This document shows, in pieces, positions 24,630 to 63,991 of a stretch of 64,000 nucleotides of DNA. Made by a program: the position numbers and the translations under genes. The number at the start of each line of letters is the position of its first letter. Within the stretch, counting starts at the first letter, position 1. The stretch lies in the IMG/VR virus record IMGVR_UViG_3300033997_000243, positions 124,001-188,000 of that record. One strand, given 5' to 3'. A model generated the notes under the pieces. It saw nothing but the letters and a program-made list of their open reading frames with translations, ran no database searches and was not told the origin of the DNA.

Positions 24630-24836
24630 TTACTTTTTATCAGTCTCTTCTGATAAAACTGACTTATTACAGTCAATAATAAGTTTGAGTTTACCGGAAG
24701 ATTCAGGCCGCTTTTTCGCAATAACAACAGAAAGTTGATCTGTCGGTAAAGGCTCAGTGCGCTGAATAAAAAAAGCGGTATCGGCTGCGTTCTTCAAGAA
24801 CTCAATTGTTTTCTTTTGGTGTGGAAAAAGATCCAT
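24630..24836 (-). CDS. small hypothetical protein starting with an SF2-helicase Q-motif-like segment
   Basis: MDLFPHQKKTIEFL; AAGGA RBS. Confidence 0.65.
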   Translation of the reverse strand: MDLFPHQKKTIEFLKNAADTAFFIQRTEPLPTDQLSVVIAKKRPESSGKLKLIIDCNKSVLSEETDKK

Positions 24837-24846
24837 AAATTTATCC

Positions 24847-25293
24847 TTAATCCAGAACAGTGATAACGCCAAAGCTATCACCGACTTTAATAACATGGCC
24901 TTCCATCAGATCGCCAACTTTTCTGAATTGACCGTCAGCAAGTTCAACAATACTATCAGAAGTAAGTTCGACAACTGATCCAGCTTTATTTACAATCGAA
25001 CTAAAGCTAACGCCACCAATGTCCACGCCCATTGTATAGTCATAACACTTGATAAGCTCTGCATCATCTGGATGTGAACTGACTCCAAGTGTTGAACTTT
25101 TACCACTGCAAACAATAGACGAGCCAAAGAAACTTATTTCACCAGCCGAAAAAATTTCGCAATCTTCATCAAAAGATTCGCGGATCATCTGCTTTAGAAT
25201 TTTAAACATTTCGGCGTGAACAAATTGATTCGGCATAATCAAAGGAACTTTACGAGAAAGTTCACCTTTAGTAACAGCAACTACGTATTTCAT
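24847..25293 (-). CDS. hypothetical protein with C-terminal Hint/intein-like fragment
   Basis: GSVVELTSDSIVELADGQFRKVGDLMEGHVI. Confidence 0.75.
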   Translation of the reverse strand: MKYVVAVTKGELSRKVPLIMPNQFVHAEMFKILKQMIRESFDEDCEIFSAGEISFFGSSIVCSGKSSTLGVSSHPDDAELIKCYDYTMGVDIGGVSFSSIVNKAGSVVELTSDSIVELADGQFRKVGDLMEGHVIKVGDSFGVITVLD

Positions 25294-25303
25294 AGTAAAT
25301 TCC

Positions 25304-25900
25304 TTATGTTACTGGCTTAATAAGTTTATCAATCTTATCGATCCAGATTGCACGTTTGCCCTCGGCCAGTGCTTTACGCATTGTTTCGCGGCCATCTTCT
25401 GTAAGCTCTCTACGGTAAAATTCATTGGCCTTAGAAAAGATTGTTGAATTGCCGCAAAGATGAAGCCCGTTATCAGATTTCAACAACGTCTGTAAATCTT
25501 CAGGTTCTATTGCCAATACGTAACCATCAGGACGACTGCCCCAATTTAATTCGTATTCTGTAACACTGGCTACCCAAATAAAAACCAATGATACTTCGGT
25601 TTTTAAAGACACTTTGTTAAAGGCAGCAACTTTTTGGCCATATGTTAAGCAACCAATGCTTTCGATGCCTGTTGCACACAAACGCACAACTTTAATGGCA
25701 TCGATCATTTGTTCGGCATACTCAGTTTTGTCGGGTCTGCGAATTGTTGCATCGTATGCACCTATAAAACTTAGGTAGGCAACACGCTCGACTTCTTTAA
25801 TGGTATTGCCTAATCGATCTTCTTTTGTAGCATTAAATAAAAAACTTAATGCACTTTCAACGCTGTTGGCGTCAAATAAATCTTTGATTTCTACTTTCAT
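25304..25900 (-). CDS. hypothetical phage protein
   Basis: EYELNWGSRPDG motif; AAGGAG RBS. Confidence 0.85.
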   Translation of the reverse strand: MKVEIKDLFDANSVESALSFLFNATKEDRLGNTIKEVERVAYLSFIGAYDATIRRPDKTEYAEQMIDAIKVVRLCATGIESIGCLTYGQKVAAFNKVSLKTEVSLVFIWVASVTEYELNWGSRPDGYVLAIEPEDLQTLLKSDNGLHLCGNSTIFSKANEFYRRELTEDGRETMRKALAEGKRAIWIDKIDKLIKPVT

Positions 25901-25910
25901 AGTGTACTCC

Positions 25911-26744
25911 TTAAACGACCAATGAACGCAAGTGCATATAAAAGGCTTTTGTTTCGCCGTCCAGATCAGTTATTTTAACGTCTGTTGTGGCCCGTTGAAG
26001 TTCAAACTTTATCTTACTTCCAATAAAGTAATCATGCACTGCCCAACTTTTAAGCGTAGAGTCTGTTGGAGTAAAATCGAAAACAAGTTCGACTGCATCT
26101 GTTCCGTGTTCTTCAAAGACACGAGCAATTTCATGTTGGTGTGTTGTGACTGCTAAACGACCACACAATGAAGTTTCATTGTCGCTAAACTTTTTGGCTG
26201 ACTTCAAAGTACCCAAAGAAATACTACGCTCTATATACCAGATAAACTTTTTCAGTGTATCATTCGTACCGCATTGATACGCAACGTGGACACAGCAATT
26301 ACGTAACACAGGATCAAGATCTACTGAATTAAGTTTGACACAAAACTTATCTATTAAAGCTTGTGCTTCTTCATACTCAGCTTTGAACAGTGCTTCACCA
26401 AGTTTGTTTTCTAACACAGCAGACGCACGATCCACAGTAATGATTGCCAACATTTTATCCAAAGCTGCATTGACAACGCCGTCAGTCAACAACTTTTTAA
26501 TATAGCTTTCATTGCCTAAGTTATCGCCTTCTTCACACGTAAGTAAATTTGTGCGTTTAATTTGAAAGGCAAGAGTATCACGCATTACACCAAATAAATG
26601 GGTTTTGGCTGATCCATCTAAATCAGCTTTACCTAGAACGCGGTGAATCATTTTTCCGTTGTACGCATCTTCTTTGATCATCGTACTGGCTTTTGCAAAG
26701 ATTACAGAAATATCTAACTGATGGTTTGGTGTTGATAGTAACAT
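25911..26744 (-). CDS. hypothetical protein (paralog of 49285..50088)
   Basis: AAGGAGG RBS; shared C-terminal half. Confidence 0.85.
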   Translation of the reverse strand: MLLSTPNHQLDISVIFAKASTMIKEDAYNGKMIHRVLGKADLDGSAKTHLFGVMRDTLAFQIKRTNLLTCEEGDNLGNESYIKKLLTDGVVNAALDKMLAIITVDRASAVLENKLGEALFKAEYEEAQALIDKFCVKLNSVDLDPVLRNCCVHVAYQCGTNDTLKKFIWYIERSISLGTLKSAKKFSDNETSLCGRLAVTTHQHEIARVFEEHGTDAVELVFDFTPTDSTLKSWAVHDYFIGSKIKFELQRATTDVKITDLDGETKAFYMHLRSLVV

Positions 26745-26772
26745 AGCGGTTCCTCCTTTGGAACGGGTTGCT

Positions 26773-26826
26773 TTTAACTAGAGTAGTTAATTTTGGACAC
26801 TCAAAAGAATGCCCAATCAAAATACA
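26773..26826 (-). repeat. conserved post-stop hairpin, copy 3
   Basis: UUGGGCA-UUCUUUUGAG-UGUCCAA (G-U pair), 10 nt after the UAG, then a TTAACTA/TAGTTAA palindrome. Confidence 0.5.
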
Positions 26827-27021
26827 CTAAGGTTGAACTTTTAGAAAGCCGTACTTTTCAATAGCGGCAATTCGTTCGGGTGTAAAATCGCCAGAAACTT
26901 TCTTCAAGCTTGGTGGATTTGTACTCAAGACTTCGGCAACTTCTACACTACTGCCGTCATTGAAGTCGTATCGCCACACAGCACCTTGTAAGTGCGTATC
27001 TTCGATTACCATTAATTGCAT
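26827..27021 (-). CDS. hypothetical protein
   Basis: AAGGGG RBS. Confidence 0.8.
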   Translation of the reverse strand: MQLMVIEDTHLQGAVWRYDFNDGSSVEVAEVLSTNPPSLKKVSGDFTPERIAAIEKYGFLKVQP

Positions 27022-27039
27022 TTATTTCCCCTTATCAAT

Positions 27040-28561: not shown

Positions 28562-29536
28562 TCAACAAATTTTAAGTGAAGGCTCTTTTGTATCTACAGC
28601 CACGAATAATTGAAAAACACTATTGAAACCAACAACCATTACTATGCCATTGGCTAAACGCATTTTAAACACAACATCCAATACAGCTGGTGGATCTTCA
28701 CCAATGCTTTTGTTATTTATTTCAAAAGCAGCATCTTTCATAGTTCCGTAAGTTTTTGCACGTTCCTTTAAAAGTTCGGCCACACTGATCATTCCGTAGC
28801 GCAAACTACGATAACGACTTGCGCCATAATAAGCTGGATTCATTTCATCACAAAATTCACCAAAATCTTCTTCTGGCTTGTACAAGGTTGCACCTCGAAC
28901 AAACAAGTTAAGTTCATTCAAGTCCTTTTTGTCCAACATGGCCACATGAGCTGCTGTAATAAAATTTTGAATGCGTAACAGAAAGTTTTGTTGGAATCTG
29001 CTAACCATAAGTTCAAACTTTATTTGATCTTGAGTTTCCAACAATTCGCTTATACGCATGGCACTCACTTGTTCCCAAGTAATTCCAGCTTCATCAAGTA
29101 ACTCTAAACCTGCTTGCACTCTGTAACTGTCAACAAAAATAACGTGGTCAATTTTACCAGTTTTGATGATCGCTTGTGAGCAGTTAATACAAGGCGTACT
29201 CATGACCAACATTACACAACGGCCAAACTTTTCAACAGATTTGTTGCGATGTGATCTGTGTGGTATGTTTGAGAAGTTTGCTTTTTTAATAGCATTTATT
29301 TCACTGTGAATAACTTCAGGCAGTGTAATTCCATCAACTTCAAACACATGATCTGATCCGCTGGCAACTCCATTGCAGCCATCACTTAAAATCTGCCAAA
29401 CTTGACCAGTAGTATGCTGAAGAATAATACTACCCATTTTCTTTCGCGTAACCTTGCTACGCTGTGCCGCAACAAACATATCCAGCACATAAGTTTTCAG
29501 CGTTGGAAATTGTTGTAGATATGAAAGTTTAGTCAC
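28562..29536 (-). CDS. dCMP deaminase with additional C-terminal domain
   Basis: RSK..RKKMGSII, GCNG, HSEINAI and PCINC zinc/catalytic motifs, YR..AGLELL.EAGI. Confidence 0.88.
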   Translation of the reverse strand: MTKLSYLQQFPTLKTYVLDMFVAAQRSKVTRKKMGSIILQHTTGQVWQILSDGCNGVASGSDHVFEVDGITLPEVIHSEINAIKKANFSNIPHRSHRNKSVEKFGRCVMLVMSTPCINCSQAIIKTGKIDHVIFVDSYRVQAGLELLDEAGITWEQVSAMRISELLETQDQIKFELMVSRFQQNFLLRIQNFITAAHVAMLDKKDLNELNLFVRGATLYKPEEDFGEFCDEMNPAYYGASRYRSLRYGMISVAELLKERAKTYGTMKDAAFEINNKSIGEDPPAVLDVVFKMRLANGIVMVVGFNSVFQLFVAVDTKEPSLKIC

Positions 29537-33841: not shown

Positions 33842-33973
33842 CTAACTACTTTTATCGGGATGGCATTTAGCAAACTTTTTATGAATTTCTTCAGCTTGCG
33901 GCTTGCTAACTTGTGTTGGTTGAATTGGCTTGGCGCTAGAATAGTTGGCCAGCCATCTGATCATTTTGTTCAT
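33842..33973 (-). CDS. 43-aa mini-protein ending in a J-domain-like HPDK motif (not in ORF track)
   Basis: MNKMIRWLANYSSAKPIQPTQVSKPQAEEIHKKFAKCHPDKSS; nearly fills the 149-nt gap; its stop overlaps the next AGGAG. Confidence 0.55.
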   Translation of the reverse strand: MNKMIRWLANYSSAKPIQPTQVSKPQAEEIHKKFAKCHPDKSS

Positions 33974-33980
33974 TGCTTTT

Positions 33981-34481
33981 TCAATTTCCATGCTGTACAA
34001 CAACCTGACTTATTCTTAGATCGCCTTGCTGTAGAATAAAGTTTAGAGCGTTTTCTGTGAAAACAATTTTTAAACTAACGCCTTTTACTGACTTAAAGAA
34101 TTCTACTGTCTTAACTTCTTTTGAACTTAACATCAAAGATACTTCGCCATTTTGACATATGGAAAACGAAGGGTAAGAATTTACTGGATTGTGATTTGAA
34201 TCAAATACTTTGATGTTATCAAAATCGTGAAAGTTCTTTTCACTCAAAAGCTCTGATAGAATAAGATGAAATTTTTCATCAGGCACCGAACTCAATCCAC
34301 TGCGAAACATTTCAAGACTTAACGTGTATTTAGAAACCGAATCTTTTACTGAATTTCCATTTCGCCAGTGAACTGAAAATTCACGTTTAAGAATTGATCT
34401 GCTTTGAATGGTTAAGAAAAATACCCAAACCATTACCATTATAAGTAATGTGATTATTACAATGAATGGAGCCATTCTCAA
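33981..34481 (-). CDS. membrane-anchored protein
   Basis: N-terminal TM. Confidence 0.8.
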   Translation of the reverse strand: MRMAPFIVIITLLIMVMVWVFFLTIQSRSILKREFSVHWRNGNSVKDSVSKYTLSLEMFRSGLSSVPDEKFHLILSELLSEKNFHDFDNIKVFDSNHNPVNSYPSFSICQNGEVSLMLSSKEVKTVEFFKSVKGVSLKIVFTENALNFILQQGDLRISQVVVQHGN

Positions 34482-34903
34482 TCTTCCTCAAGTGGTAATT
34501 CGCGTTGCGGAACAAGTTCACTATCTTTATACATTTGCTTTAATAAAGCTACATTGAAATCTGCGATTTCTTTCATGCGAGTAACCAAGAAATTTCTCAA
34601 AGGCATTATGGTGATACATTTACCATCATCCAAATATTCGTATCTTTCGCTATAGCGAGGATCGTCCTCTGAGTTCCATACGCACATTCCCATGTAATTA
34701 ATCACTACTTCATCTGAAGAGTGAACAACAACCGTTAAACCAAAATCTCCGTTCATAGGCTCTACGTTTTGCGTGTCAGCTAGTGAAGAAACATCAGGTT
34801 CAGATGCAGTATCATAAATTTCACCGTTTATTTCACTTACTACATCCAACAAATATTTGATGTCTTTGCTTGGGTTCATCAGATTGTCATAGCTGTCATT
34901 CAT
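34478..34903 (-). CDS. acidic hypothetical protein with C-terminal QRELPL motif
   Basis: GAGG RBS. Confidence 0.8.
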   Translation of the reverse strand: MNDSYDNLMNPSKDIKYLLDVVSEINGEIYDTASEPDVSSLADTQNVEPMNGDFGLTVVVHSSDEVVINYMGMCVWNSEDDPRYSERYEYLDDGKCITIMPLRNFLVTRMKEIADFNVALLKQMYKDSELVPQRELPLEED

Positions 34904-37172: not shown

Positions 37173-37898
37173 TTACCTTTTATGATTGACAAAAGAAGCT
37201 TCAAGACTGTTACATTTTAAATCAGCAATTTGATCAATCATTTGTTGATATGTGTTCAAATGTTGTACGCAGTGACAAGAATATGCAAAATACTTCTTAC
37301 CTGTCTGGTACTCACTATACTTGACAGCAGATTCAGTTAAATACATATCACGGTATAAATAATTATCTTGCGTAAACGTAAATAACTCACCTAATTTTGG
37401 AGTTGCTTCTTGCTCGTCAAAAACAACTACACCTTCCCAATAGACTTTTCCAGCGTGTTTGACTTTAGTTGGCTTATCTTTTGGATCGTCTACGTTACAA
37501 ATCCAATTTAGTGCACGTTTCCACCAAGGATTTTCTGGTGCTTGACTTACATAAATTTCTTCGTTTCTCTGAATGCGTTCAAGAATACGCATGGTGTAGT
37601 TAGAAGAATTTGTGGTCAATGGCACTAAAGGTTTTTTAACCAAAGTAATTTTAATGCAGCCCATGTCAGGTTCGACTAATTCAATACGGCATTCTCCCCA
37701 ACCAAGACCTAGATAGTTTGTTTCTATGTAACTCTTATTCGCAAGAATACCTCTGTAAGTCGGAGTATTGTTATTAAAATAAATGCTTATTTCTGAATCA
37801 TCAATAGAAGTTTCTCGCGCTAACGCAAAGAAACGATCATCCATGACTTCAATAGTGGTTTTAGCTGAAGTATCACATAAATTTGATGGCTTAAACAT
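37173..37898 (-). CDS. hypothetical protein (shared Y/F-x3-GW domain family)
   Basis: YLGLGWGECRI...GCIKITL; GGAG RBS. Confidence 0.85.
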   Translation of the reverse strand: MFKPSNLCDTSAKTTIEVMDDRFFALARETSIDDSEISIYFNNNTPTYRGILANKSYIETNYLGLGWGECRIELVEPDMGCIKITLVKKPLVPLTTNSSNYTMRILERIQRNEEIYVSQAPENPWWKRALNWICNVDDPKDKPTKVKHAGKVYWEGVVVFDEQEATPKLGELFTFTQDNYLYRDMYLTESAVKYSEYQTGKKYFAYSCHCVQHLNTYQQMIDQIADLKCNSLEASFVNHKR

Positions 37899-38649
37899 CT
37901 ATATCTCCAAATAGTTGTAATTCCGAAAACAAACCAAGATCAACCAATTTTACCATAGCGCTTTTTCTGCTGTTTGGTTTAGGTTTACCTACTTTTGGTC
38001 GGGTGAAATTCCAATTGCGTACACAATCTATTTCAAACTCGCCTGAATTTAATTGTCTACGTGCATCATTCAAAGTCATGATGTGGGATCTTACTTTGAC
38101 TGTTCTCTCTAAAGCAACTGGAATAAAATTGTCTAGTTCAGGCCAATCAATAAATCCAATATTTAGCCAGTGATTAACACAACTTCCTTTAGGCCATACT
38201 TTTGATTCACGCTCTAAATAAAACATTTTTGTTTGGCCGGTAGAAGAACTTAATTCGGCTCCCATGTCATAAAGTTTGGCCCAACAATTATCAATATGAT
38301 GTTTTGGTAATAACCAATAAGTTTGATCGATATGTTGTATAGCACTAACAAAACTTTGGGCAGATTCACCACTAAAACAAAATGCAGCAGCATAAAAATT
38401 GTCTTTACGGTAATGATCTTTATTATTAAAAGGAATAACTATGGCCTTCATTTCCACAGCATGTTCAAAAGAATTACCGCTTGCACACTCTTTAGAAATA
38501 TGTACGCAAATAACTTCGTTTGATTTGCTGCTATTCTTTCGCACAATCGGAATAAATGCAACAGGACTGACTGAGTACGAAATTGGTATTACAACAGACT
38601 TGTGTATTGAAGGTAACACATCCTGTTTATTAAGATTCATATAATACAT
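37891..38649 (-). CDS. hypothetical protein
   Basis: C-terminal LVDLGLFSELQLF shared with 39061..39894. Confidence 0.85.
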   Translation of the reverse strand: MYYMNLNKQDVLPSIHKSVVIPISYSVSPVAFIPIVRKNSSKSNEVICVHISKECASGNSFEHAVEMKAIVIPFNNKDHYRKDNFYAAAFCFSGESAQSFVSAIQHIDQTYWLLPKHHIDNCWAKLYDMGAELSSSTGQTKMFYLERESKVWPKGSCVNHWLNIGFIDWPELDNFIPVALERTVKVRSHIMTLNDARRQLNSGEFEIDCVRNWNFTRPKVGKPKPNSRKSAMVKLVDLGLFSELQLFGDIDV

Positions 38650-38657: not shown

Positions 38658-39068
38658 CTAGAAAGGCGATTTGCCTCTACTATTAAACCAAATCAAAATC
38701 ATGTTCATTGTTAGTGATATATCGCCAACGTCAGGATCTGCAATGGTCACAAGTGCATCATTTGGCCCGTGAGTTCCGGCCAATAAAATATTTTGATAGA
38801 TCTGCGAAAAGAAGGTTTCAAGTTGCGGAGTTATCACCGAAGGTTCACGTAATATCGGTAACATATCAAGCCAGTAAAGAACGTAGCCACCGTTCAAACG
38901 AAGTAAAACTGGATTGTAGTTCTTGACACCACCGCTTATAAATTTTCCATCACGAATTTTCTTTTGCATGTATTTGGCACAAGGCCACGAACCTTCCACC
39001 CAACCTAAACGAAGTGCAAAAGACTTCGCGTAGGCCAGAAGAAAGTCGTTGAGTGTACGCTCAACCAT
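38658..39068 (-). CDS. hypothetical protein
   Basis: Tiles; start uncertain. Confidence 0.75.
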   Translation of the reverse strand: MVERTLNDFLLAYAKSFALRLGWVEGSWPCAKYMQKKIRDGKFISGGVKNYNPVLLRLNGGYVLYWLDMLPILREPSVITPQLETFFSQIYQNILLAGTHGPNDALVTIADPDVGDISLTMNMILIWFNSRGKSPF

Positions 39069-39894
39069 TTTCGTTTCCACGATAGTTTTCTGGATCGTTA
39101 AACAATTGACTTGGCGAAAACAGACCTAAAGAAATCAAATGTTTGTATGTTTTGTACTGTGTGTTCAGAATGTCGAAAAGCTCTACAGGACAATCCATCT
39201 TTTGCATTGCATCACCATCCTCCAGCATCTTTAAAAAGTGTGCAATTGGTTTTGGTCGTCTTTTCTCAAAATCAAGAGACATTCTTTCATAGGTCTGACT
39301 GAACCATGAACTTCTTTTTTTGAGCAGATCTGCATCTATATAGCCGACCTTTTTACAAAAGCTGGCGGAAACCGTTGTAAGATCTTCACGAAAGTACGGA
39401 TGATTTTCATTAGCAAATTCAATTGCATACATTGACATTATGTTGTCAGTGTCCATTACATCAGTACACGAATAAATCGGAAGTTCATTGTGCTGCATTA
39501 GATATTGCCAATACATAACAAAGGTATCTGTTTCCCGATACATTGTATCTGCCTTGTTGATGATCTCGCAGAAAGTTCGTCCAATAGAATCTAGGTTAAC
39601 TGATTCTGGCTGCAACTTGAAAGCACTTGCATCAAATTTAAAATGCGTACCCATTACTCTGTCCAACAGACTAGGGCAATCTTCACGATAAAGATCAGTC
39701 ATGTCAGCAGAAAAATACATAGTAGTTGGTTGCGTTGGTTGCGTTGGTTGCGTAGCTTGCGTAGCTTGCGTTGGTTGCGTAGCTTGCTTGCCAATAGACT
39801 TTTCGACAGGCAACCAGACAATTGGCAAAGTCATTCTGTTACTCAAGCCAATTAACTGAATTCCAGATCCTGCGGCTGTAGCTAAATTTTTCAT
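39061..39894 (-). CDS. hypothetical protein with Q(A/P)T repeat
   Basis: GAGGA RBS; C-terminal LISLGLFSPSQLF. Confidence 0.85.
   Translation of the reverse strand: MKNLATAAGSGIQLIGLSNRMTLPIVWLPVEKSIGKQATQPTQATQATQPTQPTQPTTMYFSADMTDLYREDCPSLLDRVMGTHFKFDASAFKLQPESVNLDSIGRTFCEIINKADTMYRETDTFVMYWQYLMQHNELPIYSCTDVMDTDNIMSMYAIEFANENHPYFREDLTTVSASFCKKVGYIDADLLKKRSSWFSQTYERMSLDFEKRRPKPIAHFLKMLEDGDAMQKMDCPVELFDILNTQYKTYKHLISLGLFSPSQLFNDPENYRGNENG
39725..39787. repeat. 9-bp in-frame tandem repeat, 7 units
   Basis: gttggttgc x4 and gtagcttgc x3 interleaved; encodes QATQPTQATQATQPTQPTQPT. Confidence 0.95.
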
Positions 39895-47096: not shown

Positions 47097-47582
47097 CTAA
47101 AGCTTATCCAGAATTGAATCGTATGGATATTGTTTTTTAAGTTCGACTGTATTCCACGGAACACAGCGCAAAGAACATTCTGGAATAGGTGGATCACTTT
47201 CATGAAACATCAGATCACCTATGACCCGTAATCTTTGATTGTGGTGCTTTTGCCAATAACGAACTTCGCCAGTTGTTTTGTATTCTTCAATCGCACGTAT
47301 AGCCAAATCTACATTGGATAGACAATAACGATCTTCATAATCACCGCTGGTCAAGTGATCTACATAAAGAGCTGCATGTGCAATCAATTTACGAATGGTA
47401 AAAAGTCTGCCACTTACTACAGCAGCAAAACAAATATCAGGACTCAACACCAAAAGTTTTCGCAGTTCTTCTACTAATTCCTCGTAATTGTTGAACGCGA
47501 ATAAAGGCTGACTAAAAGCAATGGCTTCTGGATTCGGTGCAATTAACTGTAAACTTTTTGAAGCATCATATAAGACTATCAT
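47097..47582 (-). CDS. hypothetical protein
   Basis: GAGG RBS. Confidence 0.8.
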   Translation of the reverse strand: MIVLYDASKSLQLIAPNPEAIAFSQPLFAFNNYEELVEELRKLLVLSPDICFAAVVSGRLFTIRKLIAHAALYVDHLTSGDYEDRYCLSNVDLAIRAIEEYKTTGEVRYWQKHHNQRLRVIGDLMFHESDPPIPECSLRCVPWNTVELKKQYPYDSILDKL

Positions 47583-48040
47583 TCTACAACCCTCAAATGC
47601 GGTTTTGGTTTTGCCACTTCTTCAACTACTGGCTGATTTTCACCAATGAAAAGATTCATATCAACTTCAAAAGAAGCGCAAAGGCCAAGTGTAAGATCTT
47701 CTATTTGAAGAATGCAACCGATTGGTACTTTGAAATAACAAGGTGCTTTGTTTACTGATACGTAACCAATAACAAACTGATCGTCAATTATTAATTCTGG
47801 ACACGCATTTCGATGAATAAACACATGAAGAATTCCTTCACGATCTACAGTTGGATTAGCCATTAAACTTGGCGATATATCCAAATTCTTAGCAACCAGT
47901 ATGTCAGGTGCTGCTTGAGGATCTTCACCTGCGACAGCGGCTTTAATAAGAAAAGTCATTCGCACACGGCTTTTACCTGTACGAACAGAATCACAAATTT
48001 GCATTACGCGAGAAACTTTTGAGGATTGAAAAACATTCAT
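47579..48040 (-). CDS. sspB: SspB-like ClpXP protease adaptor
   Basis: EGILHVFIHRNACPELIIDDQFVIGYVSVNKAPCYFKVPIGCILQI...GLCASFE aligns with the SspB core; ends KPHLRVVE (ClpX-binding XB motif; E. coli RPALRVVK). Confidence 0.75.
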   Translation of the reverse strand: MNVFQSSKVSRVMQICDSVRTGKSRVRMTFLIKAAVAGEDPQAAPDILVAKNLDISPSLMANPTVDREGILHVFIHRNACPELIIDDQFVIGYVSVNKAPCYFKVPIGCILQIEDLTLGLCASFEVDMNLFIGENQPVVEEVAKPKPHLRVVE

Positions 48041-52427: not shown

Positions 52428-53060
52428 TTATTTAAGGTTTGCCGCGAACGTCAAACTATGCCGCTGGATTGCCTCAAGTGGCGTTGCTGCGTATGGCCCA
52501 ACATCAATACGTTCGTCAGTGTGAAGCATTGTTATTGTATGCCAGTAGCGATGATCTTCTTTCATTGGATCAGCATTCACCACCAGTTCTGCAATAAAAT
52601 CTTTGCAATACGCAACAGCAGAAATTTCAGAATCAGTTGCCTTTATTTTATATTGGGGGTATTGCAATACAAATTCAGCAAGCAACTCATCTGACTTTAA
52701 ATTTGCGACATCAAACTGCAAAGTTGGAAAAAGTTGTTTAAGAATTACATTACTTAGCTGAGATTTTCCTGCGTCAGACGTACCAGCAATGACCAACATT
52801 TCACCTCTACGCAAACCGCCGTTTACTACAACCTCACCACCGTACCATTCACCGAGCTTTTGGGCCAATGATTGCGGAGGAATACTTATGTCTGTTAAAG
52901 AAAGTCCATCGTTTTGTGGTGCAGGAATTGGCTCACCAATTTTTTCAAACATTTCCCGTGCTTGAGCCAAAGTAAGTTCATGCGTTGGCATATGAACAGC
53001 AGATTCAATATGTTTTGGCAAAGCAGTTCTTTTCACTTGTTTTTTAAGATGCGGTTTCAT
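52428..53060 (-). CDS. hypothetical protein with orphan DnaB/RecA-type Walker A segment
   Basis: GGLRRGEMLVIAGTSDAGKSQL; AGGAG RBS. Confidence 0.8.
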   Translation of the reverse strand: MKPHLKKQVKRTALPKHIESAVHMPTHELTLAQAREMFEKIGEPIPAPQNDGLSLTDISIPPQSLAQKLGEWYGGEVVVNGGLRRGEMLVIAGTSDAGKSQLSNVILKQLFPTLQFDVANLKSDELLAEFVLQYPQYKIKATDSEISAVAYCKDFIAELVVNADPMKEDHRYWHTITMLHTDERIDVGPYAATPLEAIQRHSLTFAANLK

Positions 53061-58933: not shown

Positions 58934-59197
58934 TTACGTTTCCAAATTGAATGTGTCTGAATTCCAAATCACTATTGTTTCCAGTACCTTCGGATCATCC
59001 GTAGAGCCTACAGAGAAACTCGCTCCTTTAGCACAATCAGGTAATTCAGCTGGAACCCAAGAAGCCAATCCGATTTTACGATACTCGCCAGCAGAAATAG
59101 AATCTGGAACAAGTCCAAGCTCTTTAATCTCTTGAGTAGTCATAAACTTTTTAGCATTCTGTTTGATATGATCGAAAGAAATAGAATCAGCTGTCAT
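58934..59197 (-). CDS. hypothetical protein
   Basis: Start moved to MTADSIS (GAGGA). Confidence 0.75.
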   Translation of the reverse strand: MTADSISFDHIKQNAKKFMTTQEIKELGLVPDSISAGEYRKIGLASWVPAELPDCAKGASFSVGSTDDPKVLETIVIWNSDTFNLET

Positions 59198-60176
59198 TTT
59201 TATCCTCACAGATGGCATCAAATTTGCCGTAAAAGAAATCGTGATCAATCGTTTTGTTTTGTCTGTTAATAGTTGCAAGAACAAACTTTTCTTTATTCAT
59301 CATTCTAAAAACACGGGTAACTGCGTCATACGAATTACGATTACTTTCTACAATTTTTTGTTTCGACTCTTCTGGCCCTTTGGTTTCATCAAGAACACGG
59401 TGCATAGGATGGGTAACTAAAGTTTCTACACCGTCAATATTTACGAGTCGTACAAAGTTAAATAAACGCTCAAAGACATTTAATTTATCTTCCAGCGTTT
59501 TGTGAAAGGCAATATGAGTTGCCCATTCAGGTATATAATTGTTATCAAACAAATATTGCAGGTCTGGAACAGAGTAAACACCGTAAGCAGATTTCTGTTC
59601 AAATCTAAATGGAGATCTTGTATACTCCAATTCTTTTAAATAAATACGTTCCAGAATGTTAAGGTGAGTGATCTGGAAAAGTCTACTTAAAATTTCGGTC
59701 TGGAACGAAAGATCTTTTTCGTGAGGGAAACCATCGTAACGAAGAATACTACTTAAGCGTTGTTTTCCGTTAGGTGTATCAACTTTCAACCCGTATAAAT
59801 CTTTTATTTCTCGCAACTTTGACCAACCAACGCCGAAATATTTGGTTAGTACATTCAAAATAGGTTTTGGAATAAGAGCTTCTTCTGCTTCATCTTCTTC
59901 CCTTGAAGAGACTAACACATCATGCTGCTCTGCAAAAAAGAATACTTCTAACGGACATTCGTTTATACCGAGTTGTGGATCTTCTTCACGATGCAACCAA
60001 CACAGAGGTCGAATAGAATAGATACCGTAATTTTTTGAAGGTGGTTTTAGTCCAGCACGTAATTCATCAAGTTTGAAAAGTTTAACACCTGCATCAGTTA
60101 AATCATTCAGCATTGAGTATGCGTTTGCCTGATTTTTTATTGCAGCTTGTTCAATACGAAAAATGTTTATATCCAT
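59187..60176 (-). CDS. hypothetical protein (paralog of 60729..61700)
   Basis: YSVPDL...WATHIAF...ERLF..VR.VNIDG....V.HP. Confidence 0.9.
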   Translation of the reverse strand: MDINIFRIEQAAIKNQANAYSMLNDLTDAGVKLFKLDELRAGLKPPSKNYGIYSIRPLCWLHREEDPQLGINECPLEVFFFAEQHDVLVSSREEDEAEEALIPKPILNVLTKYFGVGWSKLREIKDLYGLKVDTPNGKQRLSSILRYDGFPHEKDLSFQTEILSRLFQITHLNILERIYLKELEYTRSPFRFEQKSAYGVYSVPDLQYLFDNNYIPEWATHIAFHKTLEDKLNVFERLFNFVRLVNIDGVETLVTHPMHRVLDETKGPEESKQKIVESNRNSYDAVTRVFRMMNKEKFVLATINRQNKTIDHDFFYGKFDAICEDKNDS

Positions 60177-60220: not shown

Positions 60221-60742
60221 TTATCCGCCGTAACTTCCGCCGCTGTGTTTGTAGGCAGTTGCTCCAAATCCACCACGGTTTACAACTCCAGCAGCGGTGA
60301 CTGGAACAGAACTTGGATAAACTTTTGTGTGTCCAGTTTTGCTTGCTACCAGTTCATTTGTTGCTGTACGAAAGCCAGAAGGATCATCTTTTGAACGATA
60401 CAGCGGCTGGCTTTGTACAAAAGAACTTGCATTCGATGGATTGGTGGCACTTGACATATAGCCTGACATATACGGCATATAAACAAAGCCTCCACTACTT
60501 CCAGCGGTTGCCTCGCAATTTCCTGCGCCAAAATCTTCAGCGCAATCTTCTGGTTTTGTGTAACGAGGTGCAACTTGTTTGTGCAGTGCAGTTGCATCAG
60601 CAAAATCTTTCAAACACTTTTCTTTGTTGTAGTATGCAGCACATTGACCAACATTCTCAGACACTACTGGATAAACTGGTTCTTCACAGCCAGCCAATCC
60701 AGCTGTCATTAACACAAGAACAACTTTACTACTGCGCTTCAT
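60221..60742 (-). CDS. DUF1190 / YgiB-family lipoprotein
   Basis: MKRSS + lipobox LAGC; C..A...H...APRY....DC..DFG.GNC, MPYMSGYM, SQPLYRS, RGGFG and Gly/Ser tail. Confidence 0.88.
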   Translation of the reverse strand: MKRSSKVVLVLMTAGLAGCEEPVYPVVSENVGQCAAYYNKEKCLKDFADATALHKQVAPRYTKPEDCAEDFGAGNCEATAGSSGGFVYMPYMSGYMSSATNPSNASSFVQSQPLYRSKDDPSGFRTATNELVASKTGHTKVYPSSVPVTAAGVVNRGGFGATAYKHSGGSYGG

Positions 60743-61700
60743 AGCATTCCTCGAAAGTTTTGTTGTCATATAAAGGTTTAGCAATGTTTAAAAAGAATTC
60801 ATCCATTGTAACAAACTCATATTCATCTTTACGGAAAAAACGGATTGTACGTAAAGATTCTGTATAAGCAACTTTGTTGTGTTCAATAATTTCATTTGCT
60901 TCTCGCAAATACTCGCCATGAATTTTTGAGTTTTCAGTACAGCCAAGTTTACTAAGGTGCTGTGGCGAAGTATTTAAAAATGGTTTGAATTTTGGAACTG
61001 GATGGCGAACCATTAATTGTTCACCATCTAAATTTACGCAACGGGCAAGAACAAACATACGCTCACGTAAGTTTATTTCGGATTCATCAGATTTCATGTA
61101 ACCAACATGAGTGGCCCAAGGCAAAGAATACTGACTCACAATCAAGTCAGTAATATCCTCAACTGAATACTGACAATAATGTTCGGTACGCACTAATCGA
61201 GTTGGCGGTTCCATTGTACTGGATGGTTTGCGAATGAAAAGACGTTCAAGGAATTGAACACGTTGAGCCTTATTACAGAATTCAAAAAGTTGGTCAGGAT
61301 CTAAAACAGTTGAAAGTCGAACCATGACATCATGTTCAGGATGCAAGAAGTTTCCTAAATAAACAAGAACAGCACTTAGCTTGTTTTCATTGATTAGGCT
61401 GGCTGGAACTTTTTCTTCTTTTAGTGTTTTTAGAGCTTGCTTTGAAATGCCTGTTGTCATTGTTGACGGATCAACAGCATCAATTGTCAGTGCAAAGAAT
61501 ATCTTTTCAGTTTGCAACAACAGTTTATTAACTGAATCAGGAGTCTGTGGAAGTAAAGCACCCAACGAAAAGATTGCATTCGCGTACTGACTGACATTAA
61601 AGTTTTTACGCAAATCTTGTGCGCTAAAAAAATTAACACCAGCTGCTTGTAATATTTCACGAAGCTCTAAAGCGATTTCTGTTTTGGTTTTAATAGTCAT
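60729..61700 (-). CDS. hypothetical protein (paralog of 59187..60176)
   Basis: YSVEDI...WATHVGY...ERMF..AR.VNLDG....V.HP; GGAGG RBS. Confidence 0.9.
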   Translation of the reverse strand: MTIKTKTEIALELREILQAAGVNFFSAQDLRKNFNVSQYANAIFSLGALLPQTPDSVNKLLLQTEKIFFALTIDAVDPSTMTTGISKQALKTLKEEKVPASLINENKLSAVLVYLGNFLHPEHDVMVRLSTVLDPDQLFEFCNKAQRVQFLERLFIRKPSSTMEPPTRLVRTEHYCQYSVEDITDLIVSQYSLPWATHVGYMKSDESEINLRERMFVLARCVNLDGEQLMVRHPVPKFKPFLNTSPQHLSKLGCTENSKIHGEYLREANEIIEHNKVAYTESLRTIRFFRKDEYEFVTMDEFFLNIAKPLYDNKTFEECYEAQ

Positions 61701-61746: not shown

Positions 61747-61750
61747 ATCA

Positions 61751-62230
61751 TTAAACTAAAGCGAGTTCTTTTGCTTTGGTGATATTCCAACCAAGTTGTT
61801 CAAAATGCTCGGCCAGTGGAATAACTCCTTTACCTGAGTATAACTGTTTTGGAATTTCTCCACCACGGGAAACCAAGATCTCAAGCCAGTGATTTGGACA
61901 GACGACCGCCATAAATTTCTCCATAGCCAGCACAAGATCATCCGGTGTATTTGGATAATCTTCTTCCGTAAATTGAGGCGTATATATAGCATAGCCTTTA
62001 CCGCTATCTATCTTCTGACTTTCTTGAGTTCTTTTCGGTAATAACAATCGATAGTTTTTGTTATCACACAATTGAATAGATGCAAGTTCAAATATATTAC
62101 TGTAGCTAAATTTACCTTCGCTAACATTCATACTGTATACCAGTACGGAAATTTTTTGAGAGCAAACATCTACAATAATCTTTGGATAGTCATCTTCCTT
62201 GTATGGGTTCTTATCGTACTCAAAGTGCAT
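61751..62230 (-). CDS. hypothetical protein
   Basis: GAGGGA RBS. Confidence 0.85.
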   Translation of the reverse strand: MHFEYDKNPYKEDDYPKIIVDVCSQKISVLVYSMNVSEGKFSYSNIFELASIQLCDNKNYRLLLPKRTQESQKIDSGKGYAIYTPQFTEEDYPNTPDDLVLAMEKFMAVVCPNHWLEILVSRGGEIPKQLYSGKGVIPLAEHFEQLGWNITKAKELALV

Positions 62231-62270
62231 TAACTTTCCCTCTGAATATAACCTAAGCTTTTACACTCGC

Positions 62271-62732
62271 TTACTGTTGGTTCGTACCTTCAACACCGCG
62301 CTGTTTGCGATCTTGTGTTCGTGCATCCAACCAATGCAATGCACTTACAATATGTTGCAGCGCTTGTTCATTGGAATTACAAGCGAACGGGCCAGCTTGA
62401 AAACCACGAAGTCGGTGAGCGCATATTACCAAAAGATCTTCCATTTGAATTCCATTGACACCATGTTCGTTGATTGGGCCATTTTGGAAATTAATGGCGG
62501 CAAGACAAATACTTTGTTCACCGTTAAAAGCGCTTACACTGTAAACATGATTTGCATTACCGTGAGTTGGTAAATCGTCAGCAGTTACAATTGTGTACTC
62601 TGTTTTACGAATAGCTAAAACAGCTTGCTTTTGTTCGGCATCGTAATCTTCCATTGCCTGTGTAATCTTTTCAGCAGTAACTTCACCATCTACTGCAATG
62701 AAAATAGTTCCTTTTGTTGGATCATCACTCAT
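62271..62732 (-). CDS. tad1: Tad1-family anti-defence sponge protein (Thoeris gcADPR / cyclic-oligonucleotide binding)
   Basis: GNANHVY...INFQNGP...GVNGI..EDLL.I..HRLRGFQAGPFAC..NE.AL.HI..AL.WL..RT.DR..RGVEGT, the Tad1 signature recognised by eye. Confidence 0.85.
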   Translation of the reverse strand: MSDDPTKGTIFIAVDGEVTAEKITQAMEDYDAEQKQAVLAIRKTEYTIVTADDLPTHGNANHVYSVSAFNGEQSICLAAINFQNGPINEHGVNGIQMEDLLVICAHRLRGFQAGPFACNSNEQALQHIVSALHWLDARTQDRKQRGVEGTNQQ

Positions 62733-63166
62733 TCACTGACCTCGACTTCTTGCAATTGCTCTAAGGGTTCAAAAGTTGATTTGACTCCCATAAGCTTGCG
62801 TACTTGATCCATTGCCATTTCACCACGAACAGGTGTAACGCTTAAATACAAATAGTTGTATTCAGTGTGATCTGGATCTTCTGGATTTACATACTGAAGA
62901 AGTTCACCAGCTTTCCATTGATAATGATACATGCCAACGACTTTTGTTTCTTCCACTGGATTGCTACTGTTTGAAATAGCATTTACTACACGTTCAAACA
63001 GGTCGGCTGAATAACTGGCCTTTGGGTTGTTCAACCACAAACACTTTTTGTCGAAGTCAACATAAGCCGTGAAATCCGGTAAACTGTGGAGACAGTGAAC
63101 TTCTACAGTCCATCCAGCAGATTCTAAAGTTTCTTTGTGTTGCTCAATAATGCCTGAGTATGACAT
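62729..63166 (-). CDS. hypothetical protein (domain shared with 46008..47087)
   Basis: LESAGWTVEV...AYVDFDKKCLWLN. Confidence 0.8.
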   Translation of the reverse strand: MSYSGIIEQHKETLESAGWTVEVHCLHSLPDFTAYVDFDKKCLWLNNPKASYSADLFERVVNAISNSSNPVEETKVVGMYHYQWKAGELLQYVNPEDPDHTEYNYLYLSVTPVRGEMAMDQVRKLMGVKSTFEPLEQLQEVEVSE

Positions 63167-63199
63167 TTGATTTTCCTTCTAATTGGTGGGTTAAAGTTA

Positions 63200-63991
63200 T
63201 TAAATTTTACAGGCTCCGCCTTCGCAATCTTCCATATCTTCATCTTGTGTTTGAATTTCGATTAAAACATCTGGTATTTCCAGAGAATCAAAATCAACTA
63301 AGGCAAAGTCATCGTCTTTACCTGCTTCAGCACTTAAAGGCAATGTTAATACAAGAACTGGTTGATTCATGTTCACATAAATGCCGAATTGTGCATTTAA
63401 GCATGAGTGAGTTTCACCATGATCGCTGACACTGTAACTACCTTCACGGGTAAATGTTCCTAAAGGAGTATCAGCTGGAAAAATGAAGATTTTGTTTCTC
63501 AGATTTTGCATGTGTTTGGGAAATAAGCCGTCTGTTACTAAAGACACTTCAATATCTTTAATTTTCAAATCAGCTATTTCACCATTCTGCACTAACAAAT
63601 GTTGGTTTTTCGGTTGAAAATGGTTAAACCAAGATTCTTGTTCACTGATAGATGAAAATCCAAGTTCACCAGCCAGCATAATAAATTCTACGCTGTCCTC
63701 AAAATCATCTACTGATTTAATAGCTTCGTAAATAGCATCAGGGGTGAATTGTTTTTCAAGATTAAATTGGTGACTCGCACCATCCAATGTCCAAGACATT
63801 ACTCGATTTTCAAATCCAACCCCAATTTGCTTGTCAGCTTCTGCCTCAAGATGTTCATTCGACATAACTATAGAATCACTTCTCGTTGTAATAAAGCCGT
63901 TCAGCTTAACTCGCTTAAAGAATCGGCGCAACAAATTTGCAGGTTGATCCAAGTTATTCAATACGTTAGTTAAAACAGTAGTTTTGTCCAT
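63200..63991 (-). CDS. hypothetical acidic protein ending in an NrdA-like redox tail
   Basis: C-terminus QDEDMEDCEGGACKI; AGGTG RBS. Confidence 0.85.
   Translation of the reverse strand: MDKTTVLTNVLNNLDQPANLLRRFFKRVKLNGFITTRSDSIVMSNEHLEAEADKQIGVGFENRVMSWTLDGASHQFNLEKQFTPDAIYEAIKSVDDFEDSVEFIMLAGELGFSSISEQESWFNHFQPKNQHLLVQNGEIADLKIKDIEVSLVTDGLFPKHMQNLRNKIFIFPADTPLGTFTREGSYSVSDHGETHSCLNAQFGIYVNMNQPVLVLTLPLSAEAGKDDDFALVDFDSLEIPDVLIEIQTQDEDMEDCEGGACKI

What the first reader, a model, noticed from the sequence alone, without database searches (positions are those of the whole stretch)
24630..63991. Possible toolkit of host-motif mimics: orphan docking and catalytic fragments on unknown phage proteins
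Seen across the window, each without its parent enzyme: NrdA redox tail (63200), J-domain HPDK (33842), clamp-like QRELPL/ELQLF tails (34478, 37891), DnaB/RecA Walker A (52428), SF2 Q-motif (24630) and Hint block (24847). They sit alongside an SspB adaptor with its ClpX-binding tail and a Tad1 sponge. Inference: this early region may hijack or decoy host hubs (ClpXP, DnaK, beta clamp, RNR/thioredoxin) or immune sensors with short linear mimics, a coordinated strategy that per-gene annotation would label hypothetical.
Basis: inference. Interest (0 to 1): 0.7.

Follow-up and report, generated by a model that had tools for sequence, protein, structure and literature searches.

The report
Phage copies of RNR's redox tail
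Most of the listed "host-mimic motifs" are chance look-alikes, but this giant phage, which has no ribonucleotide reductase of its own, carries a detached copy of the host reductase's electron-shuttling tail, as dozens of other such phages do, alongside a genuine Tad1 immune-signal sponge and a divergent SspB protease adaptor.

Summary
The window is part of a 319.5-kb jumbo phage with no ribonucleotide reductase (RNR), thioredoxin or glutaredoxin gene. All the quoted strings are in the sequence. Only some are meaningful.

**Real**
- 63200-63991 ends in CEGGACKI, the redox-active C-terminal octapeptide of proteobacterial class Ia NrdA. It is invariant in homologues that are 55-62% identical overall.
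- 62271-62732 is a Tad1 homologue (PDB 8KBB, E 1.6e-19).
- 47579-48040 is a divergent SspB-like protein ending in HLRVVE.

**Chance or not conserved**
- HPDK is lost in an orthologue.
- ELQLF becomes EEELF in an orthologue.
- The Q-motif and the Hint block have no profile support.
- The Walker A is a conserved P-loop in a short protein, with no sign of mimicry.

**New**
- The last 45 residues of the NrdA-tail protein are a module that also exists as free-standing 39-62-residue proteins.
- 37 of 60 viral contigs encoding the tail octapeptide (G or S variant) carry it outside NrdA. None of the 37 encodes an RNR large subunit; 33 were also searched for NrdD and none has it.
- Carriers include cultured Klebsiella and Erwinia jumbo phages.
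- The neighbouring genes are replication and nucleotide-metabolism genes.

I infer a trans-acting surrogate or decoy of the host RNR redox tail. The "coordinated nine-piece toolkit" is not supported.

The parts
63200..63991 (-). 263-residue protein made of a clade-specific core ('family X', about residues 10-215) and a C-terminal acidic module ending in the NrdA redox octapeptide
   Evidence: Homologues P0002, P0003 and P0007 keep the tail invariant. The distant homologue P0008 (27% identity) lacks it. No Pfam or PHROG hit.
63203..63337 (-). 45-residue module (residues 219-263): an acidic/hydrophobic DF..DFD..EIPDV motif, an acidic linker, then CEGGACKI and the stop codon. It aligns end to end with whole free-standing 39-42-residue phage proteins.
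   Evidence: Alignment A9, (57% identity to L151:548-670). Viral scans.
63203..63226 (-). CEGGACKI: 7 of 8 residues identical to the end of E. coli NrdA (CESGACKI, Cys754/Cys759) and identical to the end of many gamma- and betaproteobacterial NrdA proteins
62271..62732 (-). Tad1 (Thoeris anti-defence 1) homologue, 153 residues
   Evidence: phmmer against PDB: 8KBB E 1.6e-19 (query 44-151 against 21-131) and 7UAV E 1.3e-13. In relative L134 the same domain is fused behind a family X core.
47579..48040 (-). Divergent SspB-like adaptor, 153 residues
   Evidence: ESM Atlas features: 85 of 100 nearest clusters are SspB, score 0.90. hhalign against four host-type SspB proteins: E 7.6e-5, probability 62%. 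Foldseek: the top 19 PDB hits are all SspB. The model is low-confidence and its alignment contained SspB sequences.
47582..47599 (-). C-terminal HLRVVE, resembling the ClpX-binding (XB) tail of SspB. Host-type tails read AHLRVIK, SLRVIK and HLTLVK.
   Evidence: Kept as HLR[VI]VE in orthologues while the linker varies.
34478..34903 (-). 141-residue protein with a conserved acidic tail PQRELPLEED (34481-34510). Its partner is unknown.
   Evidence: The tail is identical in G001 and L138 orthologues at about 62% overall identity. It fits only the loose pattern Q..L.L.
37891..38649 (-). 252-residue protein. Its C-terminal tail (...LGLFSELQLFGDIDV) is the only similarity it shares with 39061-39894.
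   Evidence: The Q of 'ELQLF' is not kept in L002 (EEELF).
39061..39894 (-). 277-residue protein with the same tail motif (...LGLFSPSQLFNDPENY...)
   Evidence: BLASTP aligns only the tails, E 0.002. The G001 orthologue keeps ..F.P.QLFNDPENY.
52428..53060 (-). 210-residue protein with a conserved Walker A (G93-S100, 52761-52784). It may be a truncated HerA/FtsK-type P-loop.
33842..34003 (-). Small ORF (likely start at the ATG at 33991) ending in KCHPDKSS. It is not a J-domain.
   Evidence: No Pfam hit. Weak 26-residue match to DnaJ with a 4-residue gap. HPDK is absent from the L138 orthologue.
24630..25293 (-). Two small ORFs carrying the 'Q-motif' and the 'Hint block'. The true start of the first is M21 (24836).
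   Evidence: No Pfam hit. The N-terminus of the 148-residue ORF matches phrog_3988, of unknown function. The motifs are no more conserved than their flanks.

Best explanation
The 24.6-64 kb stretch is part of a long block of small accessory genes in an RNR-less jumbo phage. It is not a nine-piece mimicry kit. It holds three real host-interface genes.

The notable one is 63200-63991. A clade-specific carrier domain is fused to a 45-residue acidic module that ends in the exact redox-active C-terminal octapeptide of the host-type class Ia RNR large subunit (NrdA). The same module exists as a free-standing mini-protein in many RNR-less phages.

I infer that the module works in trans on the host RNR redox relay. 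Its two cysteines would be reduced by host thioredoxin or glutaredoxin and would reach the NrdA active-site disulfide, as NrdA's own swinging tail does. The phage could thereby tune host dNTP production without encoding an RNR. The most likely effect is to sustain or speed up the re-reduction step.

Shown: the identity of the tail, its conservation, its modularity, the absence of RNR from its carriers, and its genomic context.

Inferred: the partners and the direction of the effect.
For: - **Identity.** The tail matches the last 8 residues of E. coli NrdA at 7 of 8 positions and ends at the same residue. In 120 bacterial loci encoding CEGGACKI plus a stop, about 105 are NrdA C-termini.
- **Conservation.** The tail is invariant in P0002, P0003 and P0007 while the rest of the protein is 55-62% identical. 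It is absent from the 27%-identical P0008. Among 38 orphan copies, 24 different DNA 24-mers encode the octapeptide.
- **Modularity.** The last 45 residues align with entire 39-42-residue proteins. The same tail ends at least five unrelated N-terminal parts.
- **Distribution.** 28 of 31 viral hits for the G variant and 9 of 29 for the S variant are orphans.
- **Carriers lack RNR.** PF02867 is in 0 of 37 orphan records. NrdD is in 0 of the 33 searched, of which 21 are at least 90% complete. NrdB and thioredoxin are in 0 of the 24 searched. The window's own genome has none of these, nor glutaredoxin.
- **Context.** The 124 neighbouring genes include 5'-3' exonuclease, ThyA, ThyX, DNA polymerase A, T7-like primase-helicase, endonuclease I and a dATP/dGTP diphosphohydrolase. 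One orphan lies two genes after a T7-type DNA polymerase.
- **A second motif.** In 10 of 28 distinct orphans the N-terminal acidic motif matches a matrix built from host NrdB C-terminal tails better than their own shuffles do (P<0.05; for example LDFDDFEL, P=0.001).
- **From memory, not tested here.** Re-reduction of the NrdA active-site disulfide is reported to limit steady-state turnover of E. coli RNR.
Against: - There is no experimental or structural evidence for any partner. AlphaFold2 on the 263-residue protein failed (pLDDT 52).
- The viral scans recover only exact octapeptides, so tail invariance across the orphans is partly an effect of how they were found.
- I could not compute a size-matched baseline for how often comparable phages lack RNR. 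Many of the complete carrier genomes belong to one 261-268-kb cluster.
- The window protein's own acidic motif does not match the NrdB-tail matrix (P=0.52).
- An NrdB-like docking motif would compete with NrdB, which fits inhibition at least as well as stimulation.
- The host of this phage is unknown (subsurface and wastewater metagenomes).
- The paralogous fusion of the same carrier domain to Tad1 hints at an anti-defence role rather than a metabolic one.
Confidence: 0.5

Rival explanations
1. The module is a decoy that inhibits host RNR. The acidic NrdB-like motif would block the site on NrdA where the small subunit's tail docks. The copied redox tail would occupy the active-site channel or compete with NrdA's own tail. 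This would shut down host dNTP synthesis, for instance to stop host replication while the phage feeds on degraded host DNA.
For: The NrdB-tail-like motif is significant in 10 of 28 distinct orphans. From memory: C-terminal peptides of small subunits are classical competitive RNR inhibitors, and yeast Sml1 inhibits by competing with the large subunit's C-terminal CX2C tail. The carrier domain is also fused to the anti-host protein Tad1.
Against: All carriers lack RNR and so depend on host dNTP supply or salvage. The genes sit in replication and nucleotide-synthesis modules. The motif is internal, whereas NrdB tails bind with a free C-terminus. The window protein lacks a significant NrdB-like match.
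Confidence: 0.2
2. The tail is a generic thioredoxin/glutaredoxin handle. It would recruit host thioredoxin or glutaredoxin, or draw electrons from them, for a phage protein unrelated to RNR. That protein would be the fused domain or a partner bound by the acidic motif. T7 DNA polymerase, which uses host thioredoxin as a subunit, is the precedent.
For: The same tail is fused to at least five unrelated N-terminal domains. One orphan lies two genes from a T7-type DNA polymerase. No carrier searched encodes thioredoxin. From memory: glutaredoxin 1 and thioredoxin recognise the NrdA C-terminal peptide directly.
Against: Family X has one conserved cysteine, and even that is missing from the Tad1-fused paralogue. 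No redox enzyme was recognised among the neighbours. Keeping the octapeptide exactly, down to the last residue, suggests that both of NrdA's tail partners matter.
Confidence: 0.15
3. One reading: nine short motifs form a coordinated kit that hijacks ClpXP, DnaK, the beta clamp, RNR/thioredoxin and immune sensors.
For: Three elements are real. Two further tails are conserved with unknown partners: PQRELPLEED and the LGLFS..QLF.D tail shared by two otherwise unrelated neighbouring proteins.
Against: - HPDK occurs at chance and is lost in the L138 orthologue.
- The strict clamp consensus is absent from all tails, and the Q of ELQLF is not kept.
- There is no Hint, J-domain or helicase profile hit.
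- There is no clamp gene in the phage.
- The items are scattered and not co-conserved as a set. Several genes between them are gained or lost among relatives.
Confidence: 0.07
4. The orphan tails are functionless relics of decayed phage nrdA genes.
For: The carriers lack RNR, as would be expected after gene loss.
Against: - No NrdA-like sequence lies upstream of any orphan.
- The ORFs have their own start codons and a shared N-terminal motif.
- They are annotated CDSs in cultured phages.
- The tail is fused to unrelated domains.
- Synonymous sites vary while the peptide is constant.
- The tail is the best-conserved part of the 263-residue family.
Confidence: 0.03

Closest known systems
C-terminal redox tail of class Ia ribonucleotide reductase large subunit (E. 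coli NrdA Cys754/Cys759, ...CESGACKI)
   Same: The terminal octapeptide is identical or nearly so, it is preceded by an acidic flexible linker, and it ends at the same residue.
   Different: No RNR catalytic barrel is attached or encoded anywhere in the genome. The tail sits on a 263-residue unknown protein, or on mini-proteins of 39-62 residues.
Small disordered RNR regulators of fungi (Sml1, Spd1, Hug1, Dif1) and synthetic small-subunit C-terminal peptide inhibitors
   Same: They are small, disordered, acidic polypeptides that act on the large subunit through tail-type interactions. This rests on my own knowledge.
   Different: Those regulators do not copy the redox cysteine tail. They are eukaryotic or synthetic. 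No phage or bacterial counterpart turned up in the searchable literature.
SspB, the ClpXP adaptor (Pfam PF04386; phage example: Pseudomonas phage pf16 gp18, PMC5587285)
   Same: Predicted fold and strand order, a short linker, and an XB-type C-terminal tail, HLRVVE against (A)LRV[VI]K.
   Different: It falls below Pfam detection. It has a 20-residue N-terminal insertion, a much shorter linker, and a terminal Glu in place of Lys. Docking to the ClpX zinc-binding domain is not supported either way.
Tad1, Thoeris anti-defence sponge (PDB 8KBB, 7UAV)
   Same: Near full-length sequence homology, E 1.6e-19.
   Different: It has about 40 extra N-terminal residues. In close relatives the domain is fused behind a family X core. 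The local Pfam scan misses PF24729.
PhiKZ gp184, an inner-capsid minor protein with an Acb2/Tad1-type hairpin domain (PDB 8Y6V; PMC11297242)
   Same: A sponge-type domain at the C-terminus of a larger phage protein, as in the X-Tad1 fusion of L134.
   Different: The N-terminal parts show no detectable similarity. Whether family X proteins are packaged in the virion is unknown.

Membership tests
Class Ia RNR large subunit (NrdA) | Ten-stranded catalytic barrel (Pfam PF02867) | tested here: not met
   No Pfam hit on 63200-63991 and none in the whole genome. BLASTP against E. coli NrdA aligns only the last 8 residues.
Class Ia RNR large subunit (NrdA) | C-terminal C-x4-C redox tail ending ...ACKI | tested here: met
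SspB adaptor | Match to the family profile PF04386 | tested here: not met
   No match at E up to 1 on the protein and none in the genome.
SspB adaptor | SspB substrate-binding fold | tested here: inconclusive
   The top 19 Foldseek PDB hits are SspB (TM 0.5-0.7), but the model has pLDDT 56.6 and was built from an alignment that included SspB sequences. Independent support comes from ESM Atlas features (85 of 100 nearest clusters) and hhalign (E 7.6e-5).
SspB adaptor | C-terminal ClpX-binding (XB) peptide L-R-V-V-K | tested here: inconclusive
   HLRVVE is at the exact C-terminus and is conserved as HLR[VI]VE. The terminal residue is Glu, not Lys. The complex prediction gave no answer.
Tad1 (Thoeris anti-defence 1) | Sequence homology to experimentally characterised Tad1 over the whole domain | tested here: met
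   8KBB E 1.6e-19 and 7UAV E 1.3e-13.
Tad1 (Thoeris anti-defence 1) | Binding of gcADPR or cyclic oligonucleotides | not testable with these tools
   Needs biochemistry.
J-domain (DnaJ/Hsp40) | Four-helix J-domain profile (PF00226) with a conserved HPD loop | tested here: not met
   No Pfam hit. The ORF ends 3 residues after HPDK. Helix II would be 4 residues short. HPDK is not conserved in L138.
Beta-clamp binding motif | QL[SD]LF or QLxLxL, conserved, near a terminus | tested here: not met
   No tail fits the strict consensus. ELQLF becomes EEELF. QRELPL fits only Q..L.L, although it is conserved.
P-loop NTPase (DnaB/RecA-like) | Walker A plus Walker B within a complete ATPase core | tested here: inconclusive
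   Walker A is present and conserved. Only sub-threshold hits to ABC_tran and a DnaB PHROG at the P-loop. Atlas features point to short HerA/FtsK-type fragments. Walker B is not established.
Hint/intein and SF2 helicase | Family profiles (Hint, intein, SNF2/ResIII/DEAD) | tested here: not met
   No Pfam hit at E up to 0.01 for 24630-24896 or 24847-25293. Both proteins are too short, at 68 and 148 residues.

The most novel reading that the evidence does not exclude
Orphan NrdA-tail mini-proteins are a previously unrecognised class of phage effector. They would be bivalent peptides that dock on the host RNR large subunit through an NrdB-tail-like acidic motif and insert a surrogate redox tail. 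An RNR-less phage could then drive, or gate, host dNTP synthesis with a 40-residue gene instead of a 3-kb nrdAB operon. That could also avoid the defence systems reported to sense the dNTP rise caused by phage NrdAB. In this phage clade the module has been mounted on a carrier domain that, in a paralogue, carries a Tad1 sponge instead.
Probability: 0.3. Interest if true: 0.9.

Novelty: categorically new. Interest (0 to 1): 0.8.

Why it matters
The dNTP pool is a central battleground between phages and bacteria. Hosts deplete it. Phages import RNR genes. Several reverse-transcriptase defence systems (DRT2, DRT4, DRT9) are reported to fire when phage NrdAB raises dNTP levels (bioRxiv 10.64898/2026.10.27.754916).

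A detached, exactly conserved copy of the RNR large subunit's electron-shuttling tail, found only in phages that lack RNR, would be a new and very small way to act on that pool. It would also be a natural peptide probe of the least understood step of the class Ia RNR cycle, the re-reduction of the active site by the tail.

The element is present in cultured Klebsiella and Erwinia jumbo phages, so it can be tested directly.

The case also shows the limits of reading motifs by eye. One of nine motifs led somewhere important, and five were noise.

Tried and rejected
- **Phage collection searches.** DNA and protein searches of the phage collection with window sequences found nothing.
- **Family scans.** Pfam on about 70 window proteins, plus NCBIfam and PHROGs on all 105, gave almost no named hits.
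- **Tad1 by profile.** PF24729 did not find Tad1 in the genome, nor in the 379-residue fusion protein by local hmmscan. The homology came only from phmmer against PDB.
- **NrdA tail against PDB.** phmmer with the last 39 residues found nothing.
- **Structure of the NrdA-tail protein.** AlphaFold2 with five sequences gave pLDDT 52, so I ran no fold search on it. The ESM Atlas gave no named relatives.
- **More family X members.** An exhaustive HMMER search and a profile search found only five relatives.
- **Complex prediction.** SspB-like protein with the ClpX zinc-binding domain gave no answer.
- **Recent capture of a host nrdA 3' end.** Rejected, because the flanks match at random level.
- **A correction.** My first reading that all 120 bacterial hits were NrdA was wrong. 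About 14 are small stand-alone ORFs: 12 in Neisseria, one in Moraxella and one in Thalassolituus.
- **Random control set.** A random-pattern set of viral contigs for an RNR baseline came out far too small in contig size to be useful, so I did not score it.
- **Metatranscriptome contigs.** They hold relatives of the phage but do not prove transcription.

Full report
**Setting**

The window is bases 124001-188000 of a 319,518-bp IMG/VR phage record with direct terminal repeats. All of its roughly 105 genes lie on the minus strand at 96% coding density. They belong to a 93-kb one-strand block of mostly small genes.

Nearly all of it is unannotatable:
- Pfam on about 70 proteins, and NCBIfam and PHROGs on all 105, name only a dCMP deaminase (28562-29536), a DUF1190 protein (60221-60784) and a YunG-like protein (33256-33831).
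- The genome has no RNR large or small subunit, NrdD, thioredoxin, glutaredoxin, DnaN or gp45-type clamp.
- Relatives occur in subsurface metagenomes and in wastewater libraries.

Three relatives allowed conservation tests: the 80.8-kb record G001, and two Logan contigs read as L002/L138/L139 and L134.

**Checking the observation**

All the quoted strings are present. I compared them with 2000 shuffles of the window proteome:

| Motif | Observed | Expected | P |
|---|---|---|---|
| HPD[KRN] | 1 | 0.16 | 0.15 |
| Walker A | 1 | 0.37 | 0.31 |
| Strict clamp consensus in tails | 0 | 0.07 | 1.0 |
| LR[VI]V[KE] at the C-terminus | 1 | 0.002 | 0.002 |
| NrdA octapeptide | 1 | 0 | 0 |

The first four rows are unremarkable. 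The last two are not.

**Items that fail**

- **HPDK ORF (33842-34003).** It has no J-domain profile. It aligns to DnaJ over only 26 residues and needs a 4-residue gap in helix II. It stops 3 residues after HPDK. Its orthologue in L138 reads QLISIKSD at that place while keeping the N-terminal half.
- **ELQLF (37891-38649).** It becomes EEELF in L002.
- **Q-motif ORF.** It really starts at M21 and is 68 residues long. Its orthologue has 122 residues. LFP[HY]QKK is no better conserved than the rest.
- **Hint block.** It sits in a uniformly conserved 148-residue protein with no Hint or intein profile.
- **Walker A (52428-53060).** It lies in the best-conserved block of a 210-residue protein at 48% identity. 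It resembles short HerA/FtsK-type P-loop fragments. It is a real P-loop, and nothing suggests mimicry.

**Conserved tails with unknown partners**

- PQRELPLEED (34478-34903) is identical in three orthologues at 62% overall identity. It fits only a loose Q..L.L pattern.
- The proteins at 37891-38649 and 39061-39894 share nothing except a C-terminal L[VI].LGLFS..QLF.D tail (BLASTP E 0.002). I record this as a possible shared docking motif, not as clamp binding.

**The two companion genes are real**

- **Tad1.** 62271-62732 matches solved Tad1 structures (8KBB E 1.6e-19, 7UAV E 1.3e-13). Local Pfam scans miss PF24729.
- **SspB-like protein.** 47579-48040 is below Pfam detection, but three lines of evidence support it:
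  - Its nearest ESM Atlas clusters are SspB in 85 of 100 cases (score 0.90, 199-202 shared features).
  - hhalign against four host-type SspB proteins gives E 7.6e-5 in the register MAFFT also finds.
  - A low-confidence model finds only SspB structures as its top 19 PDB hits. That model's alignment contained SspB sequences, so this evidence is partly circular.
  - Its tail HLRVVE is kept as HLR[VI]VE while the linker varies. It resembles host tails such as AHLRVIK.
  - Phage SspB homologues are already described (pf16 gp18, PMC5587285). Docking to the ClpX zinc-binding domain gave no answer.

**The NrdA tail**

E. coli NrdA ends ...SIQDDGCESGACKI. The 263-residue protein ends ...QDEDMEDCEGGACKI, with 7 of 8 residues identical and the same last residue.

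Nothing else in the protein resembles NrdA. Its homologues P0002, P0003 and P0007 (55-62% identity) keep the last 9 residues, and most of the preceding 15, unchanged. The 27%-identical P0008 lacks the whole extension.

A scan of 185,579 species genomes for DNA encoding CEGGACKI plus a stop returned at least 120 loci. About 105 are NrdA C-termini of Gamma- and Betaproteobacteria. So this is the host enzyme's signature. The DNA flanks show no sign of recent capture.

**The tail is a mobile module found in RNR-less phages**

The same scan of IMG/VR gave 31 loci:
- Two are true NrdA proteins next to NrdB.
- One is the relative G001.
- 28 are small stand-alone ORFs, or fusions to unrelated N-terminal parts.

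The CE[S]GACKI variant added 9 orphans against about 20 true NrdA proteins.

The last 45 residues of the window protein align end to end with entire 39-42-residue proteins, at 57% identity to L151:548-670. The shared pattern is an acidic/hydrophobic motif, often followed by Pro-Asp, then an acidic linker and the octapeptide.

About 14 of the bacterial hits are the same kind of small ORF: 12 in Neisseria, one in Moraxella and one in Thalassolituus. One viral contig, L154, carries the Neisseria type.

Absence of RNR from the carriers:

| Family | Orphan-carrying viral records with a match |
|---|---|
| RNR large subunit (PF02867) | 0 of 37 |
| NrdD | 0 of 33, of which 21 are at least 90% complete |
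| NrdB | 0 of 24 |
| Thioredoxin | 0 of 24 |

Cultured carriers are Klebsiella phage vB_KpM_FBKp24 (gene 129, annotated hypothetical), Centimanus, and eight Erwinia pEa_SNUABM phages.

The neighbours of the orphans are replication and nucleotide-metabolism genes: 5'-3' exonuclease, ThyA, ThyX, DNA polymerase A, primase-helicase, endonuclease I and a dATP/dGTP diphosphohydrolase. One orphan lies two genes from a T7-type polymerase.

Among 38 orphan copies, 24 different DNA 24-mers encode the octapeptide. This set was selected for the exact peptide, so the count shows synonymous drift, not freedom from bias.

**A second mimicry inside the module**

Host NrdB proteins end in ...DD[LF].[DG]F[EDQ]L. 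A matrix built from 36 such octamers scores the N-terminal motif of 10 of 28 distinct orphans above their own shuffles at P<0.05. Examples are LDFDDFEL (P=0.001) and LDFDSFTL. The window protein's motif does not pass (P=0.52). From memory, the motif also resembles the SSB C-terminal tail, so its target is open.

**The carrier domain**

In L134 and in P0009 the Tad1 domain is the C-terminal part of a 379-residue protein. Its N-terminal 200 residues are homologous to the core of the NrdA-tail protein (hhalign probability 96%, E 4.9e-9).

So this clade-specific family X core carries an NrdA tail, or a Tad1 sponge, or nothing. PhiKZ gp184 is an inner-capsid protein with a Tad1/Acb2-type domain at its C-terminus. 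It is a precedent for mounting a sponge on a larger phage protein. Whether family X proteins are packaged in the virion is untested.

**Mechanism**

Shown:
- An exact, conserved, modular copy of the NrdA redox tail.
- It is restricted to phages without RNR.
- It lies in nucleotide-metabolism neighbourhoods.

Inferred:
- It engages the partners of the native tail, namely the NrdA active-site disulfide and thioredoxin or glutaredoxin, in trans.

I lean toward a surrogate that sustains or accelerates re-reduction of host RNR, because the carriers depend on host dNTP supply and the genes occupy the niche where nrdAB usually sits. Inhibition, through NrdB-site competition in the manner of Sml1, and a generic thioredoxin handle both remain live alternatives. 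A relic of nrdA decay is unlikely.

**Comparison and novelty**

- No paper in the searchable library contains the octapeptide strings.
- No paper there describes a phage protein acting on host RNR through a tail copy.
- The cultured-phage genes are annotated as hypothetical.
- The closest concepts are the fungal disordered RNR regulators and synthetic small-subunit peptides, and neither copies the redox tail.
- Defence systems reported to sense the dNTP rise driven by phage NrdAB give a plausible selective reason to act on host RNR without carrying one.

**Verdict**

The follow-up uncovered a widespread orphan RNR-tail module that appears to be undescribed.

Noticed in passing
L011, L014, L039, L043, L085, L077 and others (bacterial genome-contig loci): Neisseria (12 loci), Moraxella and Thalassolituus genomes carry stand-alone ORFs of 42-73 residues that end in CEGGACKI and are not part of NrdA. 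A viral contig (L154, 45 kb) carries the Neisseria type, so these may be prophage genes.
   Followed up: partly
L134:11276-12415 (and P0009): In close relatives the Tad1 domain is fused behind a paralogue of the NrdA-tail protein's core. In the window, Tad1 stands alone with a different 54-residue N-terminus.
   Followed up: yes
window 61751-62230: This 159-residue ORF is absent from G001 and L134. A wastewater contig skips it exactly (joint 61748 to 62270). It is a gene-sized indel between Tad1 and its downstream neighbour.
   Followed up: partly
window 37891-38649 and 39061-39894: Two otherwise unrelated neighbouring proteins share a C-terminal L[VI].LGLFS..QLF.D tail. A 553-residue protein elsewhere in the genome (genome 34834-36495) ends ...RGLFSMFGNMAKK.
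   Followed up: partly
window 39061-39894, residues about 37-57: A run of T/Q/P/A-rich repeats (QATQPTQATQ...) is missing from the G001 orthologue. That orthologue is only 54% identical, although the surrounding genes are 95-98% identical.
   Followed up: no
window 59187-60176 / 60729-61700 and 25911-26744 / 49285-50088: Two pairs of distant paralogues lie within the window (27-28% identity, E 1e-8 to 1e-15).
   Followed up: no
window 28562-29536: A 324-residue dCMP/cytidine deaminase-domain protein carries a long C-terminal extension and a weak hit to the NCBIfam 'anti-phage dCTP deaminase' model (E 0.002). Relatives also encode a 419-residue thymidylate-synthase-like protein and a radical SAM protein nearby (L134, L139). 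This hints at unusual nucleotide metabolism.
   Followed up: no
window 24630-24896: The true start is M21 (24836). Relative to the 122-residue orthologue in L139, the window copy has a 52-residue internal deletion.
   Followed up: yes
window 63200-63229 against wastewater contigs X5-X7: Relatives in wastewater libraries match the tail-coding 30 bases and then diverge sharply upstream. Their sequence there matches the P0007-type linker (IEVQPQSMDD). The tail is therefore the most conserved DNA in the gene.
   Followed up: partly
L144:193-378, L172, L200: A 61-residue orphan-tail family in phages of about 49 kb lies two genes downstream of a T7-type DNA polymerase. That polymerase is 631 residues long, against 704 for T7 gp5, and it aligns only from T7 residue 396 onward. 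I did not check whether it lacks the thioredoxin-binding loop.
   Followed up: no
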